A stretch of DNA of 64,000 nt from Oikopleura dioica (Eukaryota > Animalia > Chordata): contig OU015568.1 of the NCBI GenBank assembly GCA_907165135.1, positions 13,392,001 to 13,456,000 on the forward strand, read 5' to 3'. This document shows positions 7,805 through 18,710 of the stretch, piece after piece. Position numbers and translations under genes: made by a program. How positions within the stretch are numbered: position 1 is the first letter of the stretch; every line of letters starts with the position of its first letter. Below the pieces are notes generated by a model. It was given only the letters and a program-made list of their open reading frames with translations, searched no databases and was not told the origin of the DNA.

Positions 7805-10800
7805 ACCTCTCACTGCCACAAATCACGAAATAAAACTTTGACAAACTAGCTTTCATAAATTTCTCTCGTGAATGAATTTTCATGAGAAAAACATTCTTTC
7901 TGGTTCAATGACATGCAAATCAGAACAGATATCTACCTATCTCAGAGCGTGTAATTATCTCAGGTCATCTCATGGTCAACAGTAAATTTATTATGACTGA
8001 AACGGCACCCCATTGCCCTTAGTAACGCTCTTCATAAATCTTGTCGCTTTGCTATTTGGAAGCCCGTTTTCCCTTTATTTGCGGTACTATTACACTGTCA
8101 ATATTTCCCCCATCGTGGTTGTGACTTAAAAACTGTCAGTTTGAGCTTGAATCCTGATTCAAGATTGCACTTTCTGTGATTTTTATCGATCAGGCGGCTT
8201 TAGTATCGTGTACGCGCCGTTTGTGTGAGACGGGATTATCTGAGGTGTCCAGTTTAAGGCTATAGTTCCGGAATAGTGATTTAAATCATTGCACCACCTC
8301 TGTCCTAGAGTGTGGTAAGGTCAACAAATGTATAAGGTTTCAGGCGCGGACGCAGGTGTGGTGCTCCGGAAGCTTTTAGCCCTAGGGTGCACTCCTCCAC
8401 CGGACATTGCACCAAGCGAGGTCTAGGAAAAATATACTTCCCGTGACGATCAAAGCAATTTTCATTGCGCCAGGTGGATCAAACGAGGTGGATTGTTTTA
8501 TTGCCCGCGAGAGTTGCGGCTAAGCTTTTCGACTGCTTGCCAAAAATTCTTGTGACTACTTCCAAAAGCTATTTTTGACTTGTTTCAGAAATTTGCCACA
8601 AAAATATATCCGGAACGAGTCATTTCTTTATTGTGGTTTCATAATTTTTTGCGCTTATTTTCATTGTACAGTTCAATTTATGAAGTAACAAGCGTGATTC
8701 GCAAGCTAACATTAGAGCATCAGAAATCAGAATTCACGAAAAAGGTAAACTCCTTTCGACCGTCTCGTGGCCCTCTCACCTCGCATCGGAATTTACTCTT
8801 TTACAACTTCCCCGGGTCATAAATCCCTCAACTTCTTGCTTGATTTTGCTTCCTGCAGGATATCGTCGAACTTTGAGTCTGCAAGATTCGGTGGGTACTG
8901 CGCGCGTGAGCACCCTACCAAGCAAGAAGCTCCCGTCACCAGGTGTTTCATTGGTGCTGCGAGCTGGGCGATGTGCCTTATGCGCTGGTGCCGGAGGTGG
9001 CTCGTAGTTGGCAGTAGTGTCGTCCGTGGGCTAGTTGAATGGTTTTGGCGTCGCGCGCCCCCTAACTGCGCGCTACGCTGCTCAACGAATACACAATTTC
9101 ATATTTCGTTTTACAATTCGCTTTAATTTACTATTTTCTCAGCACAAGAGTTAACTCGCCCTTGAATAAAAGAAACACAAAGAATCAGAGACAGAATTTA
9201 CAACGGATAGAGATAAGGGAAGAAGATGCGTTGGAATAGTTTCTCGCCGTTTTTTGCGGGACTGATAAGTGCACAGTTTACTGATGACCACTTAAAAGTC
9301 ATGGAGACGCATTTACTAAAGGTAATCATCAGATATAGAAGTTGTTGATAAAGTGTCCCCAGAAGAAATCCTGGCGCCGGGGGGTCTGTAAAGCGATCAC
9401 CACTGAGCTAGAAACACCCGGCTGTGGAGAATTTTTTAAGGCGCATTTTTGCGACTTCCGGGGCAAATATTTTCACTTCCGGACAAGTTACTTGTGTAAA
9501 GTGCTCTGTTCTCAAGTTGACCAGTGATTATACCCGCGCCTATAATGTGGGCATAAGTGCTGGTGATTATGCACCGTCTTTTGGTGCCTTAGCGTACTTT
9601 TTTAATTATGGAAAAACATCAGAAGACAGGGGGTATACGGAAAATAGGATAGGCTTAGCCACAAAGCTGTGTGCACAGCGTTTTTTCGCGCAGTGCTTGG
9701 GTGTTGACGTGCCCTGGGGGTTGAGCCCATGAAAGAGAGGGTTCTTTGAAAAACTTAACCCCTTGGAAATCAGATCTCGTTATTGCAGCACGTTCACTTC
9801 CGTGAAGGATCTGAGAGGGCACACGTTCAGTTAGCACCTTTTTAGGCTCCTCAGATGAAAAGAAAATGTAGCACGAAAAAAATTTTATGAGCTCCCAAAG
9901 TCGCATATGGCAGTAGCCATACCTGGCCTTCTTGAAAAAATACGAGTCGAGGAGCAATGAATAACATAGGCCAGCTGGACACCCTTCAACGCCCTGTAAA
10001 ACAATTTATCTCAAGATGATTTGGAGCGAATTATGAGTCGCTTTGATCTATTGTTCTGAGTAATTTGGCGTTATGAAATAACTTGTTCTTGCTAAAGTTG
10101 AAATCATAAAAGACTATCGCTACAGCTCTTAATGAGGGAAAATACACGGTTTTAATTTGACAGGCAACATTGTCGTGATAATCTGAAACAATCTGTATAA
10201 AATGACCGTCTTCCTCTTGCGGATAATTTTCGCTGGAACTCGAGATGTCAAAATCAAACCCCTAACAAGTGACTGTGACAAAAAGTTGCCGATCCACAAA
10301 ATTCCGATTTTGAGCAATCCGGAAAACTACGGTTAAAAGTAATGAAAATTTTTCGCAGCAACCACAAGCGAAGCTGCGCAATTTCGCCAAACTTTGACAC
10401 TTGCTGCGTTCTGCTTGCGGAAGAATTTATTTCACTTCCTGCCACAGTGACACCGCCAGAGCGCATCATCAGAACACCACCACCATGGCGAAAATAATTA
10501 TCCAACTCAAAGTCAATAATCAGACAATGTCAAGTGGGAGTCAGATTTCCGGAACAGTCCATAAATTCCTCCTTGAATGATGATATTATCAGGAAAAAGG
10601 CTTTGCGTCATCGGAGCGATTTTATTGAGCATCACCTGAAGTCGTTAGAGTGGTTCACTGAAATGTCATGTTCACGGCTCTTCTCATTACGAAGATTATA
10701 AATCTGTAATCGTGCTTTCAAAAGCCACATTATAGGAAGACCCTTTGAAGGCAGTTCTCAAGGCGCTATGGAAATTTGTGCTGATTAGCTGGTACATGAC

Positions 10801-12080
10801 TGAAAAGCCGGAAATTTTTAGAACATAAAGAATAATCTTCGTCCGGTAGTCCTTCCCGAAACTTCCGGCGTGTCTCCCCTAAACTTGGGTTGGTTTGACT
10901 TGGGCAGGCGCGCGGTGCCTGGTGGTCTGGCCCGTCCCGTCTGCACCAAATCGATCATTAGAGGTTCATAGTAAATAGCCGTTGAGATCATTAGGGCTGA
11001 TTTGATTTCAAACGACACATAACGGGCCACCACTAATGAGCGCTCGCCTCCGTATGATGAGTCTCTTTAGAAAACTCCTAGAAACCTCATTTTATCGAAC
11101 AAAAAACCCTTCCCAAATGTCTTCCCAAAGATCGGAATTAAAACAGAAATTCATAAAAGCTTGCGGGCAACGTGACGTGTGTGCCCAAGCGCGCAATTCT
11201 TCAGCGCAGATCGCGAGATGAGTGCAAATTTAACCAGCTGGGCACACAACGATACAAACGTGAAATATTAGCACGGCAAATCTAGCGCCAGAAAGGAAAT
11301 AAGCTTGCCAATCTGATAGCTTGCGCCGGATGTTACTCCGTATAAACCATTCTTCTAGTATATTTTTTCCCTGTAAACTCTGATCAATTCAGTAGTGTAA
11401 ACGGTAGATTAGAACAGTAAACTCTCAGTCTGAGTAAGGCCTGGAGAATTCGCTCCGAAATAGAATGAATATCACGTGGTTTATTTATGAAAACTAAAGA
11501 ACATTGATTCAAGATTTATTTTGTACAAAATAAACCTCCAGAAGCTTAATTCAATGAGCGCGTAACGTAATATTTTGCAGAGGCATTAATTTTTGCGCTC
11601 TGAAGTAGGCTAAATGCCAATTCTTGAGTGGTTTGATGGGTCTCGCGCGGGTGGTTGTGTGACACTTCCGCCGCGGTTGCCGGTTCGCGCGGGGGAAAGG
11701 AGAGATTTAGACCTATATCCGGATCCTGGCACGGCTTCCGTTGCTTTGAGAAGCTGCCGAGTTCCGCGCGAGCGGAATTTCGCATCCACCTCTCTTCACA
11801 CAAAACGGATGTCCTCTTCCTAACGCAGCTCTAAAATACTGATAAGGATCTGCCTTTTTCTGGTACAGGAATCTTCCTTTCCGCTCAGAGAAGTAATGTC
11901 TTCACATTTACACTTAAACTTTCCGATTTGGCAAGTTAAATTCTTCCTCCGCAACGAATTTATTTCAATATTTGATCGACCATAAAATAAATGCTCGTTG
12001 CTCTTTTTGCCCGCCATTTTCATACCAACAAGATTCCATCAAATATCGCTGACCACATAAATTCTAACATCTCGTTTTAG

Positions 12081-15000
12081 GTTTTCCAGCTTGATTCTGT
12101 CCCACGGACGACCTCTGATAGCAGATCAAAGCTTTCTCCTTTACTGGAAAGAATGTACCATTTCCAGCAAGACAGCGAACATGAAGAACATTTCGAAATT
12201 GACGACGACGTGAGTCAAATTTCGAATATTGTCCGCCACCAGCACGAGCATCTCAGATTATACGATGATGGAAAGCTCCACTTTATTCATGATATCCATC
12301 TACCGGAAGTGGAGAAGTTGAACAAAGCCGAGCTTTTACTTGACACAACGCAATTTCAGCCGAATTCAACTTTTGACGCTTTTTTGGTAAGTTAAAAAAA
12401 GAAGAATAAATGTAGATTCTCGTAAAAGAATCAGTTTTAGAAATGTTGCTTTAAATTTTTATCCCAAAAAATCTCAAACGGTCATATTTAGGTTGGCGAG
12501 AACGGCGACGTCCTAATCTCGCGCGTGGCAGGGGACTCGGAAATAATCCGAATTGATCTGACAGAAGCCACAAGCAAGTGGCTCTCGGGCTTTCCCAACA
12601 ACGGCGTACGTTTGACAATCAACTCGCAAAATAAAAGGTGACTACCATTTAAAATTGACCTATAAAAACACACACGATTTCGACATCTGTTAACACTTAA
12701 TTAGAGTGCGTCGAAATGTTGAAGACTTCGACGAGCATTCTGCCACGTTTCTGACGTACTCAAGTGACGGCAAAGGACCTACGCTAGGGTCGGCCAAAAA
12801 AATTTTTTGATCTCTAATTCTTTTGAAACCAGTTTCAGTGGATTTGCGGTGCTCAAAAACCTTTATAAACTAAAAATTGCTGAGATCCGATGTTCAGGTC
12901 TCATTCAAGGGCATATTTTCCAAAAATTGGGACTTGAATTTGACATACTTTCTTAAAAAAATTAAATTCACTATATATTCAAGGCGAATGATATATTTGG
13001 TGGCAGAATATGATAGAAAAGGGTTCAAATTATACAGGTAAAGAAGAGAAAAGAGATTGAATACTCATATACCATTTTTATGGAAGGGTGTTTTGTGCCA
13101 ATTACCCTTATATATGGTTAACTCAGGTATTCATTCATTCATAAATCAATAAAAAAAGATGTTTCAATCCCAAATTTTTGCTCATAAATTAGATTAAACA
13201 CTAAGGAATAACTTTGCTCTTTCAGAATGCTTATATGAGTTGGGGAATTTTTTTTAATAATTTTTAAATAAAACTACTGGATATTTACGAGAACTTAAAA
13301 ATGAAGAAAAAAATCTTTTAAGAGGACAAAAAAGGTTCAAATTCTTATCTATATGTTTGAACGATGATAAGAAATTATTAACTAAGTGTTGTGTGGATAT
13401 CATCAGTGATATTCATGAGAGTCTATTATCAGAGGATCTGTTGGTCTCTATCTGTATCATTAAGAGGTCTTGAATAACCTTCAGCACTATGAATGTAGTT
13501 TCTAGTCGTTCAAATTGCACAAAATATCTTTTTGAATTATGCTTACATCATCAGAAAGCCTGCTACTGATACCTATGATCTGTAAGGTAATATCTGTATT
13601 AGAAACGCTTAGTCAATGACTCCGAAAATTGCATACAGTCATTAACAGGGCCAAAGTTGCCCAAAATGTCTTTTTGGAAAATCGTCAAAGTATCAGAAGT
13701 CCTCCAACTGATACCTATCATCTGTTAGTCAGTGTCTGTATTAGTAACGCTATGTCGATGACTCCGAAATTGCATTCATTCATTAACAGGGCTAAAGATG
13801 CCCGAAATGTCTCTTTGGATAATCGTCAAAGTATCAGAAGTCCTCCAACTGATACCTATCATCTGTAAGTCAGTGTCTGTATTAGAAAGGCTTAGTCAAT
13901 GACTTCCGAAATTGCATACAGTCATAAACAGGTCTAAAGATGCCCAAAATGTCTTTTTGCATAATCCTCAAAGTATCAGATGTCCTCTAACTGATATCTA
14001 TCATCTGTTAGTCAGTGTCTGTAATAGAGAGGCTTAGTCAATGACTCCGAAAATTGCATTCAGTCATAAACAGGGCTAAGATGCCCAAAATGTCTATTTG
14101 AATAATCCTCAAAGTATCAGAAGTCTTCCAACTGATACCTGTTGTCTGTAAGTCAGTGTTTGTATTACCATGAAGTTTTACTCTTGATGGAGAAAGTCCC
14201 TGGGCCCCCTTCACCGTTTCCCGCCAATTCAATGTCGGGGGATTCTAGAAATTTTGCCAAGCCCATGTTTGGCGTTTTCTCGAGTCTCGAAATTATGTGC
14301 GGAAGAAAAATGTCCGCTGACTGGCTAGACACAGCTGGCGCAGAATTCAGTCGGGTAAGGGGCGAAGCCGACCCGAAGGAAAAGCAAGCCCCGTCTCTTA
14401 CATTCAGTCAGGTAAGTGGCGAAGCCGACCCGAAGGCAAAGCCAGCCCCGTCTCACAATTCAGTCAGGTAAGGGACCAACCCGACCCGTACCTAACTGAA
14501 TCCAAAAGACGAGGCTTGGCTCCCCTTCGGCTCGGCTTGGCCCCTTACCTGACTGAATTAAGGAGACGAGGCTTGCCCCCGGGTCGCCTTGGCTCTTTAC
14601 CAACCTGAATCCAAGAAACGGGGCTTGCCTCCCCTCCGGAGCGTCTTCGCCCCTTATCTAACTGAATCCAAGAAACGGGGCTGGCCTCTCCTTCAGCTCG
14701 GCTTGGCCCCTTACCTACCTGAATCCTAGAAACGGAGCTAGCCTCCCCTCCGGTTCGGCTTGGCCCCGTATCTAAGTGAATCAAAGAGACGGGGCTGGCC
14801 TCCCTCCGGGTCGGCATGGCCCCTTACCTAACTGAATCCAAGAAACGGGGCTGTCCTCCCCTTCGGGTCGGCTTGGCCCCTTACCTAACTGAATCCAAGA
14901 AACGGGACTGGCCTCCTCCGGGTCGGCATGGCCGCTTACCTAACTGAATAAAATAAACTGGACTGGCCTCCCCTTCGGGTCGGCTTGGCCCCTTACCTAA

Positions 15001-17972
15001 CTGAATCCAAGAAACGGGGCTGTCCTCCCCTTCGGGTCGGCTTGGCCCCTTACCTAACTGAATCCAAGAAACGGGGCTGGCCTCCTCCGGGTCGGCACGG
15101 CCCCTTACCTAACTGAATCCAAGAAACGGGGCTGTCCTCCCCTTCGGCTCGGCTTGGCCCCTTACCTGACTGAATTAAGGAGACGAGGCTTGCCTCCCCG
15201 GGTCGCCTTGGCTCTTTACCAACCTGAATCAAAGAAACGGGGCTTGCCTCCCCTCCGGGTCGTCTTGGCCCCTTATCTAACTGAATCCAAGAAACGGGGC
15301 TGGGATCTCCTTCGGCTCGGCTTGGCCCCTTACCTACCTGAATCCTAGAAACGGAGCTAGCCTCCCCTCCGGTTCGGCTTGGCCCCTTACCTAACTGAAT
15401 CCAAGAAACAAAGCTAGCCTCCCCTCCGGTTCAGCTTGGCCCCGTATCTAAGTGAATCAAAGAGACGGGGCTGGCCTCCCCTCCGGGTCGGCATGGCCCC
15501 TTAGCTAACTGAATCCAAGAAACGGGGCTGTCCTCCCCTTCGGGTCGGCTTGGCCCCTTACCTAACTGAATCCAAGAAACGGGACTGGCCTCCCCTCCGG
15601 GTCGGCATGGCCGCTTACCTAACTGAATAAAATAAACTGGGCTGGCCTCCCCTTCGGGTCGGCTTGGCCCCTTACCTAACTGAATCTAAGAAACGGGGCT
15701 GTCCTCCCCTTCGGGTCGGCTTGGCCCCTTACCTAACTGAATCAAGAAACGGGGCTGGCCTCCCCTCCGGGTCGGCACGGCCCCTTACCTAACTGAATCA
15801 AGAAACGGGGCTGTCCTCCCCTTCGGGTCGGCTTGGCCCCTTACCTAACTGAATCCAAGAAACTGGGCTGGCCTCCTCCGGGTCGGCATGGCCGCTTACC
15901 TAACTGAATAAAATAAACTGGGCTGGCCTCCCCTTCGGGTCGGCTTGGCCCCTTACCTAACTGAATCCAAGAAACGGGGCTGTCCTCCCCTTCGGGTCGG
16001 CTTGGCCCCTTACCTAACTGAATCCAAGAAACGGGGCTGGCCTCCCCTCCGGGTCGGCACGGCCCCTTACCTAACTGAATCCAAGAAACGGGGCTGTCCT
16101 CCCCTTCGGGTCGGCTTGGCCCCTTACCTAACTGAATCAAGAAACGGGGCTGGCCTCTCCTTCGGGTCGGCTCGGCCCCTTACCTGACTGAATTAAAGAG
16201 ACGGAGCTTGCCTCCCTCCAGGTCGTCTTGGCCCCTTACCTAAATGAATCCAAGAAACGGGGCTGGCCTCTCCTTCGGGTCGGCTCGGCCCCTTACCTGA
16301 CTGAATTAAAGAGACGGAGCTTGCCTCCCCTCCGGGTCGGCTTGGCCCCTTACCTAACTGAATCCAAGAAACGGAGCTGGCCTCCCCTTCGGGTCGGCTT
16401 GGCCCCTTACCTAACTGAATCCAAGAAACGGGGCTGGCCTCCCCTCCGGGTCGGCTTGGCCCCTTACCTAAATGAATCCGAGAAACGGAGCTTGCCTCCC
16501 CTTCGGGTCAGCTTGGTCCCTTACCTGACTGAATATAGGAAACGGGGCTTGCCTTCCCTTTTGGTCGGCTTAATTCAAGAGATGAGGCTCGCCTCCCCGT
16601 CGGGTCGTTTTAGCGCCTCACTTTACTGGTGCTCCCTTTACCCGCTCTCTAGGGGTGCACTATCTGCGCAACCCACTGTACCTGACTGAATTTAAGAGAC
16701 GGGCTTATTCGCCTCAAGTCATCCAGGAGTTGGTCTTTCACCCGGGTTCCTTCGGAAGGTTTACGGCAGATAGTGAACGAAAGTGGTTAAATGTGGCAGT
16801 TTTCGGCTAAGCAAGGCTATTTAAATATTTTTTTGAATATTGGTCTTCAACCAGTTGGTCTTCTAGTAAGGGGGTCCTCCGGGAGGTCCTCCGGCAGAAA
16901 GTGACCGAAATTGGTCAAATGTGGCAGTATGTGGCCATCCAAAGCAATTTATTTTTTTTCTATTATTGGTCCTCCAGCAGTTTGTCTTCCAGTAAGGGGT
17001 CTTCCGGAAGGTCCTCCGGCAATAAGTGGCCAAACTTGACCGAAGTCGGCAATCACTTGCCAATCAAGGCTTGATATTTGGCGTACCAAAAAATTCGATA
17101 TTTAGAAACGTCCAAGATTCACGTTTTTAGTGACGAAAATCGCGATTTTCAAAAAATTCTAAAAAAATTTCCCCAACTCGCACAGACAAATGGTTAGTAC
17201 CATTCGAATCGTCTCGTTCTCCTCTTTCTAACAAGGTATAATTCGTAATTGAAACACGAGATCGATTTTTTTTTGGCCGACCCTAACCTACGCTCTCCAG
17301 ATCCAGAAGGTAAAAATAATTTTAGTAATCTTTTGGAAAGAAATTTTCAGAAAATCGAAAAAGAAGTCCTCGCGGCTGATTCGAAATCGCTTGGAACCCT
17401 GCAGCCGCGAGAAAATGTACATCGATTTCAAGTCGATCAAGTGGACCGAGTTCATCGTCGCTCCTTCTGGCTTCGACAGCTATCTTTGTTCGGTGAGTTA
17501 GCTTGAAGTAATTCGGCTTCTAAGAATGATTGAAAGAGACTAAAGAGGCAACTGTTATGAGCGATCATCGTCCGCGTCTTTGAAGGGCCCTTCAAATTTT
17601 AATTTACCGGATGTTGTTAAGCCCCTACACTAAGCCAGCTCCTTTTTACTATTTTCTAATGACCCCATGTCAAAGAGCGAGCAGCTTTCTGTTTAGTAAT
17701 TGACGGTTACTTCAGGGAACATGTCCGTATCCTCTCGACGCTCACTTGAACCACACAAATCATGCTATCTTCAATTCGGTGGTTGCTCGACTTGATCCGC
17801 TAGAAACTGATGGTCCTTGCTGCGTTCCGACTGAGTTAAAGCCTCTCACGGTTTTATACATTGACAACAGTCAGAGGGTAAGAGAAAAATTTGATTAAAT
17901 AAATTAACCTCTTTCTAGGCTGTGTTAAGATCATACGAAGACATGGTAGTAGAGTCATGCGGGTGCAGATAA
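12081..17972 (+). CDS. BMP2/4-like TGF-beta family ligand, interrupted by a transposon; signal-peptide exon not located
   Basis: Exons: 12081-12386; 12492-12637 (IDLTEATSKW..NNGV prodomain motif); 12705-12784 plus 17286-17309 (RVRRN..SSDGKGPTLSRSRR); 17351-17492 (CSREKMYIDFKSIKWTEFIVAPSGFDSYLCS); 17716-17877 (GTCPYPLDAHLNHTNHAI..CCVPTEL); 17919-17972 (SYEDMVVESCGCR*). All seven cystine-knot Cys present. Confidence 0.92.
13430..14165. repeat. Tandem repeat, ~141-142 bp unit, ~5 copies (inside the hAT element)
   Basis: The motif CTGATACCTATCATCTG and variants recur at ~13566, 13708, 13849, 13991 and 14132. Confidence 0.85.
14345..16690. repeat. GC-rich minisatellite, ~57-bp unit, roughly 38-40 direct copies plus 2-3 inverted copies at the left end
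   Basis: Unit CCCTTACCTAACTGAATCCAAGAAACGGGGCTGTCCTCCCCTTCGGGTCGGCTTGGC; period 57 (e.g. 14821 vs 14878). Copies at 14345-14490 are in reverse orientation. Confidence 0.93.
16735..17055. repeat. Degenerate ~128-bp tandem repeat, ~3 copies (subterminal in the hAT element)
   Basis: GGGGTCCTCCGGGAGGTCCTCCGGCAGAAAGTG..AAATGTGGCAG-like blocks at ~16742, 16870 and 16997. Confidence 0.6.
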
Positions 17973-18467
17973 CTGTACTTTCCCCATTGTATTCATCCTT
18001 CCATGCCCAGTCACGCAAAATTACTGGGCGGCGCTGGAACTGCCAACTGCTTTCAAGAAAAGCAGCTTATCTATCAGGTCGTCTTGTCAAGAGCAAAAAA
18101 CTACTAAACCCTCAAGTCCTTTCTGCCACTGTCCGGAGGAGCCTCAAATCTGCATTAAAAATTTGAGCTGATTCATAAAACGGTCTTTCCGGAGATATTT
18201 TTCACTGCATCATCCCATGGAGGAATCTTGTACTAAAACAAACATACTCAAAAATAATATTGTAAATTCAACCATTTCCCCTGTACAGTCCGATAAAATA
18301 AACTACAAGTTCAATCCTACGTAGAGATTTTTCTCTGCAATCAATAAAAACAGGCAAATTCAAAAACTTCAAGCGCAGGCGTTTCAAGTAATCTGGATTA
18401 CATCGATAAAAACAAATCGAGAGAACAGAGAATCGGGAAAGAACTCATTTCTAAGGAAAATTTTGAA

Positions 18468-18710
18468 ATGTTTTTGGACAAGGAAGCAGAGGAAAATCAA
18501 GTTATCGAGGTTCTCAGAGACGCAATTATGATTTTACTCGGTACGACATTGTTCCTTGTCACTATATTTTGCATTCTTTTGATCCTTGTTGCTCGTCTGT
18601 CTCTTCGAATCTACTCATATTATTTGAAAAAGCCTCCTCCAACAGGTAAACCGACGAGAGATTCAATAAGTAACGATGAGCTCAGCCAGGTTTCGCCAAA
18701 AGCTTTCTAA
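18468..18710 (+). CDS. Small single-pass membrane protein (80 aa), function unknown
   Basis: ATG-initiated ORF with an acidic N-terminus, a hydrophobic stretch (IMILLGTTLFLVTIFCILLILVA), then basic residues and a PPP motif. Confidence 0.5.
   Translation: MFLDKEAEENQVIEVLRDAIMILLGTTLFLVTIFCILLILVARLSLRIYSYYLKKPPPTGKPTRDSISNDELSQVSPKAF

What the first reader, a model, noticed from the sequence alone, without database searches (positions are those of the whole stretch)
12777..17350. hAT transposon inside a BMP coding exon that could be spliced out as a new intron
Seen: a 4.5-kb element with TIRs and a perfect 8-bp TSD sits in the exon encoding DGKGPTLSRSRR, just upstream of the mature BMP domain. 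Unspliced, it stops translation at TGA 12808 and removes the ligand. The left TIR contains a GT at 12789 (CTAGG|GTCGGC, phase 2). The right TIR, TSD and host flank read TTTTTTTGGCCGACC-CTAAC-CTACGCTCTCCAG|, i.e. a branch-point-like CTAAC and an AG at 17299-17300, also phase 2. Splicing 12789-17300 gives in-frame GPTLGSRRKSK versus ancestral GPTLSRSRRKSK; splicing to the next acceptor (17350) is also in frame. Established: maize Ds (hAT) elements can be spliced from exons, introner transposons create introns, and larvaceans show heavy intron gain and use BMP in patterning. Inference: this may be transposon-to-intron conversion caught in progress in a developmental ligand gene, or else a segregating null allele.
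Basis: partly seen in the sequence, partly recalled or inferred. Interest (0 to 1): 0.88.

Follow-up and report, generated by a model that had tools for sequence, protein, structure and literature searches.

The report
Private transposon insertion in BMP exon
A 4.5-kb cut-and-paste transposon sits inside a coding exon of a BMP growth-factor gene in the Okinawan Oikopleura dioica reference genome, but every other DNA sample that could be read lacks it, so it is a very young private insertion, probably a broken allele, and no RNA shows that it is becoming an intron.

Summary
A 4,501-bp element (12785-17285) has perfect 18-bp inverted ends and a perfect 8-bp target duplication (ACCTACGC). It carries no transposase and is filled with 142-, 57- and ~126-bp tandem repeats. 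It interrupts exon 4 of an otherwise intact BMP/TGF-beta gene. Read-through stops at TGA 12808.

The window is O. dioica OKI2018_I69, PAR, OU015568.1:13392001-13456000.

The insertion is absent elsewhere:
- Two same-lineage DNA runs carry an unbranched contig across the precise empty site at full single-copy depth.
- Three further public contigs are also empty.
- Orthologues of the other lineages found, including a cDNA-like contig, keep the uninterrupted ...YSSDGKGPTLSRSRRKSK....

The public gene model (CAG5089622.1) already removes the element as an intron. It uses a different donor (GT 12756), which deletes 12 conserved residues.

In a simulation, 56% of exonic positions in this gene would allow in-frame removal through the TIR GT, and 93% if nearby host GTs are allowed. 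The proposed donor GTCGGC is weak, and the AG is host sequence.

The only RNA that could be laid came from another lineage without the insertion, so splicing is untested.

Best reading: a recent, rare insertion allele. The scan found similar young exonic hAT insertions elsewhere in this genome.

The parts
9226..9321 (+). BMP gene exon 1 (start codon, signal-peptide-like MRWNSFSPFFAGLISA...)
   Evidence: The spliced CDS reproduces public protein P0001 exactly.
12081..12386 (+). Exon 2 (prodomain)
   Evidence: RNA reads of a sister lineage cover it, and the differences are mostly at third codon positions.
12492..12637 (+). Exon 3 (prodomain). The upstream intron 12387-12491 is confirmed by RNA joints.
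   Evidence: joint 12385->12491, GT..AG, 16 reads in X4 and 25 in X5.
12705..12784 (+). Exon 4, left part (…RVRRNVEDFDEHSATFLTYSSDGKGPT + 1 nt), cut by the insertion
12756..12757 (+). Cryptic host GT (GAC|GTACTC) used as the donor by the public gene model g12282
   Evidence: exons joined 12755^17301 translate exactly to P0001 / CAG5089622.1.
12777..12784 (.). Left target-site duplication ACCTACGC
12785..17285 (.). Non-autonomous hAT-like element, 4,501 bp. Its ORFs of 60 aa or more lie in the tandem-repeat arrays and none looks like a transposase; they were not run against a family library.
   Evidence: No other copy lies in the window. The interior is many-fold over flank depth in two DNA runs.
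12785..12802 (+). Left TIR TAGGGTCGGCCAAAAAAA.
12808..12810 (+). First in-frame stop (TGA) if the element is not removed
13516..14167 (.). 142-bp tandem repeat, 4.6 copies
14344..14488 (.). 57-bp repeat, 2.6 copies, inverted relative to the main array
   Evidence: (I1-I25)
14485..16571 (.). 57-bp tandem repeat, 36.9 copies, 84% matches
16744..17079 (.). ~125-128-bp tandem repeat, 2-3 copies
17268..17285 (-). Right TIR (reverse complement of the left TIR, 18/18)
17286..17293 (.). Right target-site duplication ACCTACGC
17294..17309 (+). Exon 4, right part (…LSRSRR; furin-type RSRR).
17351..17492 (+). Exon 5 (start of the mature TGF-beta domain)
   Evidence: Pfam PF00019, E=6.7e-07
17716..17877 (+). 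Exon 6 (TGF-beta domain)
   Evidence: Pfam PF00019, E=2.5e-09. Best solved relatives are BMP2/6, GDF5, BMP6 and BMP7.
17919..17972 (+). Exon 7 (…AVLRSYEDMVVESCGCR, stop TAA)

Best explanation
This is a very recent germline insertion of a non-autonomous, hAT-type cut-and-paste element into coding exon 4 of a conserved BMP-family ligand gene. So far it has been seen only in the haplotype that became the OKI2018_I69 reference, which was assembled from a single male of a laboratory culture. Shown: the transposition hallmarks, the absence of the insertion from every other sample readable here, and purifying selection on the gene between lineages. Inferred: the filled allele is a loss-of-function or reduced-function allele. 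Unspliced mRNA stops 8 codons into the element, before the second furin site and the whole ligand domain. Such an allele could persist because it is young, because the PAR is diploid, and because selection has had little time to act. In this gene-dense genome, new insertions should often land in exons. The element is not an established intron. Any rescue by cryptic splicing is possible but unproven, and every candidate junction would alter the RSRR cleavage motif.
For: - Hallmarks: perfect 18-bp TIRs and a perfect 8-bp TSD.
- Source: the window is identical to OU015568.1 of GCA_907165135.1. That assembly comes from one male of a culture with about 3.6% heterozygosity (PMC8008620).
- Empty sites in DNA runs: X29 and X30 each hold a contig joining 12776->17286. 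It skips 4,509 bases with 9 ambiguous bases (TSD+1). Depths are 122.4 and 90.3, equal to their single-copy flanks (119-122 and 82-94). Heterozygous bubbles nearby sit at about half those depths.
- Empty sites in public contigs: L122 (SRR23998797), L123 (SRR23998815) and L124 (ERZ17293588) all read GGACCTACGCTCTC[C/A]AGATCCAGAAGgtaaa.
- Other lineages: P0005, P0027 (intronless 1,334-nt contig L127) and OdB3 CBY23887.1 keep YSSDGKGPTLSRSRRKSKKK.
- Constraint on the gene: 27 of 33 well-supported RNA-versus-reference differences are at third codon positions, and 24 of 31 changed codons are synonymous.
- Mobile family: the element interior is many-fold over flank depth in X29 and X30.
- Chance test: an in-frame GT-AG removal is available at 56-93% of simulated exonic insertion positions.
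Against: - No RNA from a carrier was examined, so efficient splicing of the filled allele is not excluded.
- The public hint-assisted AUGUSTUS model joins 12755^17301 in frame. I cannot tell whether an RNA hint supported that junction.
- The upstream furin-type site RVRR could still release a ligand from an in-frame spliced product.
- Zygosity in individual I69 and the allele's frequency in the culture are unknown.
- Logan contigs drop rare variants, so a low-frequency filled allele in X29 or X30 cannot be excluded.
- Earlier notes of this scan report several other young exonic hAT insertions in this reference, including one in essential POLA1. That could hint at tolerance through splicing.
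Confidence: 0.72

Rival explanations
1. Newborn intron. The spliceosome removes the element, with a few flanking bases, from most transcripts. It would use a cryptic GT (host 12756 or TIR 12789) and the host AG at 17300 or the next acceptor at 17350. The allele would then still make an in-frame BMP precursor and could spread as a gained intron.
For: All four GT-AG combinations, and skipping of the whole exon, are in frame and free of stops. The O. dioica-trained gene predictor chose 12756-17300. The same gene already has a 2,759-nt intron, so long introns are handled here. About 11% of introns in this assembly are non-canonical, which suggests permissive splice-site recognition (PMC8008620). 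The upstream RVRR site could still allow maturation. Precedents recalled from memory: maize Ds spliced out of exons, and introner DNA transposons (Huff et al. 2016, cited).
Against: No junction read exists. The in-frame possibility is expected by chance (56-93%). The TIR donor GTCGGC has C at +3 and G at +4, whereas all six natural donors of this gene are GT[A/G]A. The AG and the 'CTAAC' are host or TSD sequence, so the element has no built-in acceptor. Every candidate product loses either the P4 arginine or the whole RSRR motif, or 12 residues that are identical in the other lineages found. The allele was found in no other sample.
Confidence: 0.2
2. Assembly artefact: a chimeric long read or a mis-join placed a repeat inside the gene in the Nanopore assembly.
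For: The filled junctions were not seen in any independent data set here. The interior is highly repetitive.
Against: An exact 8-bp duplication of the target flanking exact 18-bp inverted ends is the signature of transposition, not of a mis-join. The empty sites in other samples match the predicted pre-insertion sequence to the base. The assembly had 221x Nanopore coverage and Illumina polishing.
Confidence: 0.03
3. The ancestral state is the filled site, and the other samples carry precise excisions.
For: None specific.
Against: hAT excision normally leaves footprints and retains TSD bases, yet all empty sites are footprint-free. The uninterrupted exon is shared by the other O. dioica lineages found.
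Confidence: 0.01

Closest known systems
Ordinary transposon insertion polymorphism that disrupts a coding exon (a spontaneous insertional allele)
   Same: A young element with intact TIRs and TSD, presence/absence polymorphism with a precise empty site, and a premature stop on read-through.
   Different: Nothing essential. The host is a developmental ligand gene in an unusually compact chordate genome, and the allele happens to sit in the public reference.
Maize Ac/Ds (hAT) insertions in exons that are partly removed by cryptic splicing (recalled from memory, not tested here)
   Same: hAT-type ends, an exonic insertion, and candidate donors in or near the element terminus joined to a downstream acceptor, giving near-wild-type in-frame mRNA.
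   Different: In maize the spliced products were demonstrated by cDNA. Here no carrier RNA exists, and the terminal GT has a poor context.
Introner / introner-like DNA transposons (Huff, Zilberman & Roy 2016, cited in PMC13326754; Gozashti et al. preprint, which does not mention Oikopleura or tunicates)
   Same: A non-autonomous DNA transposon lying inside a gene, with the idea that TSD or terminal bases contribute to the splice sites.
   Different: Introners are short, occur as hundreds to thousands of spliced intronic copies, and bring or create both splice sites. This element is 4.5 kb, mostly satellite, supplies at best one weak GT, and shows no evidence of being spliced.
Public gene model Oidioi.mRNA.OKI2018_I69.PAR.g12282.t1 (CAG5089622.1)
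   Same: It is the same locus, and it already treats the element as lying inside an intron ending at AG 17300.
   Different: The model uses the host GT at 12756, not the TIR GT at 12789. As a result it lacks 12 residues that the orthologues in the other lineages found all retain.

Membership tests
hAT superfamily DNA transposon | 8-bp target-site duplication | tested here: met
   ACCTACGC on both sides, 8/8. It does not fit the loose nTnnnnAn preference, which I recall from memory.
hAT superfamily DNA transposon | Short TIRs (about 10-25 bp) beginning with (T/C)A(A/G)NG | tested here: met
   18-bp perfect TIR starting TAGGG. The motif itself is recalled from memory.
hAT superfamily DNA transposon | Transposase with a DDE/RNase-H fold and a C-terminal hAT dimerisation domain, in this copy or an autonomous partner with the same ends | tested here: not met
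   This copy has no transposase-like ORF. Its ORFs of 60 aa or more lie in the tandem repeats and read as repeat translations; I did not run them against a family library. An autonomous partner cannot be sought with a 64-kb window. Earlier scan notes report hAT transposases elsewhere in this genome, but none was linked to this TIR.
hAT superfamily DNA transposon | Evidence of mobility: multiple copies and presence/absence polymorphism with a precise empty site | tested here: met
   The interior is many-fold over flank depth in X29 and X30. Five independent empty sites were found.
Spliceosomal intron / introner | RNA junction reads showing removal | not testable with these tools
   The only RNA that could be laid (X4, X5) is 90-95% identical, so it comes from another lineage, and it has the uninterrupted exon. 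No Okinawan transcript of this gene is in the protein collections.
Spliceosomal intron / introner | The element itself carries or creates both splice sites | tested here: not met
   Only a GT (GTCGGC) lies in the TIR. The AG at 17299-17300 and two of the five bases of 'CTAAC' are host or TSD sequence.
Spliceosomal intron / introner | In-frame removal more likely than chance | tested here: not met
   Simulation over 953 exonic positions of this gene: 56% allow stop-free in-frame removal using the TIR GT, and 93% if host GTs within 50 nt are allowed.
BMP / TGF-beta family ligand (host gene) | C-terminal TGF_beta cystine-knot domain with seven cysteines ending CXCX | tested here: met
   PF00019 on exons 5 and 6. 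Best solved relatives are BMP2/6, GDF5, BMP6 and BMP7. The protein ends ...ESCGCR, and seven Cys are visible in the mature region.
BMP / TGF-beta family ligand (host gene) | Signal peptide, prodomain and a furin-type R-X-X-R site before the ligand | tested here: met
   The hydrophobic N-terminus MRWNSFSPFFAGLISA is judged by eye only. RVRR and RSRR lie upstream of the first cysteine. The Pfam prodomain model did not hit.

The most novel reading that the evidence does not exclude
The filled allele is functional because the Oikopleura spliceosome removes the 4.5-kb hAT-type element through cryptic sites. That would make it a directly observable first step of intron gain by a transposon in a chordate developmental gene. 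Together with the other young exonic hAT insertions noted in this reference (POLA1, a Kir channel and others), it would point to a general splicing-based tolerance of exonic transposon insertions in larvaceans.
Probability: 0.15. Interest if true: 0.75.

Novelty: new member of a known kind. Interest (0 to 1): 0.3.

Why it matters
For biology, this is one more sign that hAT-type elements are currently active in the Okinawan O. dioica lineage. It also shows that in so compact a genome new insertions do land in coding exons, so the reference carries private, probably deleterious alleles.

For users of the reference there is a concrete caveat. The public protein CAG5089622.1 (g12282) lacks 12 conserved residues only because the gene model had to splice out a private transposon. 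BMP comparisons or knock-down designs based on it should use the uninterrupted allele.

The locus would matter for intron origins only if carrier RNA showed efficient in-frame removal. That experiment is simple and now well defined.

Tried and rejected
- **RNA evidence.** The look-up of sequencing runs listed no RNA run holding the stretch. The two bulk 2026 RNA runs I laid (X4, X5) came from another lineage at 90-95% identity, with an uninterrupted exon and zero depth in the element. They say nothing about splicing of the filled allele.
- **Metagenome scan.** A scan with the 16-nt TIR returned 120 loci. BLAST of the whole region against them gave only one 23-nt chance hit.
- **Junction-spanning ORFs.** Exact-protein look-ups of ORFs that span the filled junctions (17249-17503 and 12706-12807) found nothing on record. 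This is not evidence of absence.
- **Transcript fragments.** A search for fragments across the junction with P0001:150-250 found nothing.
- **Other copies.** The window holds no other copy of the element, so TSD, orientation and phase statistics for the family could not be made.
- **Other searches.** Rfam found nothing in 9000-18500. Literature searches found no description of this element or allele.
- **Not built.** I made no species-specific splice-site weight matrix because I had no sufficient intron set. The donor assessment rests on the six introns of this gene and general knowledge.
- **Rejected readings.** Assembly artefact, because of the TSD/TIR signature. Filled-site ancestry with precise excision, because the empty sites are footprint-free across lineages.

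Full report
**Observation.**
- The element spans 12785-17285 (4,501 bp).
- Its ends are a perfect 18-bp inverted repeat, TAGGGTCGGCCAAAAAAA. A 16-mer of it, with up to two mismatches allowed, occurs only at these two places in the 64-kb window (0.04 expected by chance).
- It is flanked by a perfect 8-bp direct duplication, ACCTACGC, at 12777-12784 and 17286-17293.
- The ORFs of 60 aa or more inside it all lie in the tandem repeats and none looks like a transposase; they were not run against a family library.
- About three quarters of the interior is tandem repeat: 142 bp x4.6, 57 bp x2.6 (inverted), 57 bp x36.9 and about 126 bp x2-3.
- No other copy lies in the window.

**Host gene.** Seven exons on the + strand encode a TGF-beta-family precursor.
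- The exons are 9226-9321, 12081-12386, 12492-12637, 12705-12784[insertion]17294-17309, 17351-17492, 17716-17877 and 17919-17972.
- The precursor has a hydrophobic N-terminus, a prodomain, two furin-type motifs (RVRR and RSRR) and a seven-cysteine ligand domain ending ESCGCR.
- Pfam TGF_beta hits exons 5 and 6. The nearest solved structures are BMP2/6, GDF5, BMP6 and BMP7.
- Without removal of the element, translation reads GPTLGSAKKIF and stops at TGA 12808-12810.

**Identity of the window.** A search with the 101-residue exon-2 peptide found a 321-aa protein that is 100% identical (P0001). It is CAG5089622.1, 'Oidioi.mRNA.OKI2018_I69.PAR.g12282.t1' of Oikopleura dioica. Its locus in GCA_907165135.1 (OU015568.1:13398226-13412972) matches the window base for base, which places the window at OU015568.1:13392001-13456000. 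The 3' end of the O. dioica spliced-leader sequence, recalled from memory, occurs exactly three times in the window. According to PMC8008620:
- The assembly came from a single male (I69, generation 47 of a laboratory culture).
- Estimated heterozygosity is about 3.6%.
- 11% of introns are non-canonical and the median intron is 49 bp.
- Gene models came from AUGUSTUS with RNA-seq hints.
- 44% of the repeats are unclassified.

**The public model already 'splices' the element.** Joining 12755 to 17301 (donor GAC|GTACTC in the host exon, acceptor CTCTCCAG|A in the host exon) reproduces P0001 exactly. This intron is 4,545 nt. It deletes YSSDGKGPTLSR, which the orthologues in the other lineages found all retain unchanged (P0005, P0027 and OdB3 CBY23887.1). 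I cannot tell whether an RNA hint supported the model. No public contig other than the genome record encodes exactly this protein.

**Polymorphism.**
- *Laid DNA runs.* The one read-laying run used two DNA runs that hold the region, from studies other than that of the best holders (X29, and X30, which is labelled organism B). Both carry a contig that joins 12776 to 17286, skipping 4,509 bases, with 9 ambiguous bases (the TSD plus one). Depths are 122.4 and 90.3, the same as their single-copy flanks. Nearby heterozygous bubbles sit at about half those depths (tables 5 and 8). These unitigs run through the site without branching, so both samples look homozygous empty.
- *Public contigs.* Three more contigs came from exact look-up of the exon-2 ORF. 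L122 and L123 are about 95% identical to the reference, and L124 is 98.5% identical. All read GGACCTACGC-TCTC[C/A]AGATCCAGAAG-gtaaa, the predicted pre-insertion sequence with no footprint.
- *cDNA.* An intronless 1,334-nt contig (L127) from another lineage shows the exon contiguous and normally spliced to exon 5.
- *Conclusion.* No independent source showed the filled site. The identical TSDs and TIRs, together with this distribution, indicate a very recent insertion that is private or rare.

**RNA.**
- No indexed RNA run holds the stretch.
- The two bulk 2026 runs I laid gave 57 and 67 reads, almost all at 90-95% identity. They confirmed intron 12387-12491 and had zero depth across 12888-17221.
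- At 17286 they left loose ends reading TTTACTGACGTATTCGAGTGACGGAAAAGG. This is identical to L127 and orthologous to 12747-12776, so the exon is uninterrupted in another lineage.
- Of the 33 best-supported differences in exons 2-3, 27 are at third codon positions. Of the 31 changed codons, 24 are synonymous. The gene is therefore expressed and under purifying selection.
- None of this tests the filled allele.

**Is the in-frame GT...AG meaningful?**
- Seven GTs lie between the exon start and the stop, and three of them are in phase 2 (12747, 12756, 12789). The downstream host acceptors 17300, 17306 and 17350 all need phase 2.
- Five removal routes were checked: 12756 or 12789 to 17300 or 17350, and skipping of the whole exon. 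All are in frame and free of stops.
- I simulated an insertion of this element at every exonic position of the gene. In 56% of positions an in-frame, stop-free removal is possible with the TIR GT and some downstream AG. The figure is 93% if host GTs within 50 nt are allowed. The arithmetic therefore carries no evidential weight. An earlier follow-up of this scan reached the same conclusion for a hAT in a Kir exon.
- The TIR donor GTCGGC departs from all six natural donors of this gene (GTAATC, GTAAGT, GTGACT, GTAAAA, GTGAGT, GTAAGA; all GT-purine-A). The CTAAC motif is half TSD and the AG is host sequence.
- Each candidate product removes the P4 arginine or the whole RSRR motif, or 12 conserved residues. 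The upstream RVRR might still allow processing (inference).

**Classification.** The 8-bp TSD and a short TIR beginning TAGGG fit the hAT superfamily; the TIR motif is recalled from memory. Mobility is shown by copy number and by the polymorphism. The defining transposase is absent from this copy, and no partner could be sought, so 'hAT-type, non-autonomous' is a well-founded label rather than a proven membership. A metagenome scan with the TIR gave only chance hits.

**Verdict.** The best explanation (0.72) is a private or rare insertion allele of a constrained BMP gene, probably null or hypomorphic, that happened to be captured in the reference haplotype. The newborn-intron reading (about 0.2) remains open only because no carrier RNA could be examined, and nothing in the sequence favours it beyond chance. 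Earlier notes of this scan describe similar young exonic hAT insertions in the same genome (POLA1, Kir and others). I take these as a lead that the family is active. Exonic hits are expected in a gene-dense genome, so they are not independent support for splicing.

Noticed in passing
window 12756-17300; public protein CAG5089622.1: The public OKI2018_I69 gene model g12282 lacks 12 residues (YSSDGKGPTLSR) that the orthologues in the other lineages found all retain. The cause is that the model splices out the private transposon from a cryptic exon GT, so the reference protein misrepresents the gene.
   Followed up: yes
P0016 (OdB3 CBY23887.1) versus P0027 / L127: The Bergen gene model carries an extra 23 residues (VRKGLLRMIECGSNETNFLSDHR) between the equivalents of exons 5 and 6. 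The cDNA-like contig lacks them, so this is probably a mis-set splice site or retained-intron piece in the model.
   Followed up: partly
window 9322-12080: Intron 1 of the BMP gene is 2,759 nt, very long for a genome with a 49-bp median intron. At least 10294-12080 is shared with the diverged haplotypes L122 and L123. Its content was not examined.
   Followed up: no
window 12630-12720 and 17294-17309: Two furin-type motifs, RVRR (exon 3/4 junction) and RSRR (just before the ligand), bracket a 28-residue linker. The arrangement is reminiscent of the S2/S1 sites of BMP4. The insertion lies inside this linker.
   Followed up: no
window 14344-16571: The 57-bp satellite inside the element reaches summed contig depths more than 100 times the single-copy flanks in two other individuals. 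It is therefore abundant in the genome beyond this element. A short inverted block of the same unit lies at 14344-14488.
   Followed up: partly
L122, L123, L124 versus window 10294-12785 and 17286-18625: Same-lineage haplotypes differ from the reference by about 5% (L122, L123) or about 1.5% (L124) over 2-3 kb of this locus. L122 and L123 carry a synonymous TCC>TCA change immediately next to the insertion site.
   Followed up: partly
window 42106-42124, 43938-43956, 44670-44688: There are three exact matches to the 3' end of the O. dioica spliced-leader sequence, two on + and one on -.
   Followed up: no
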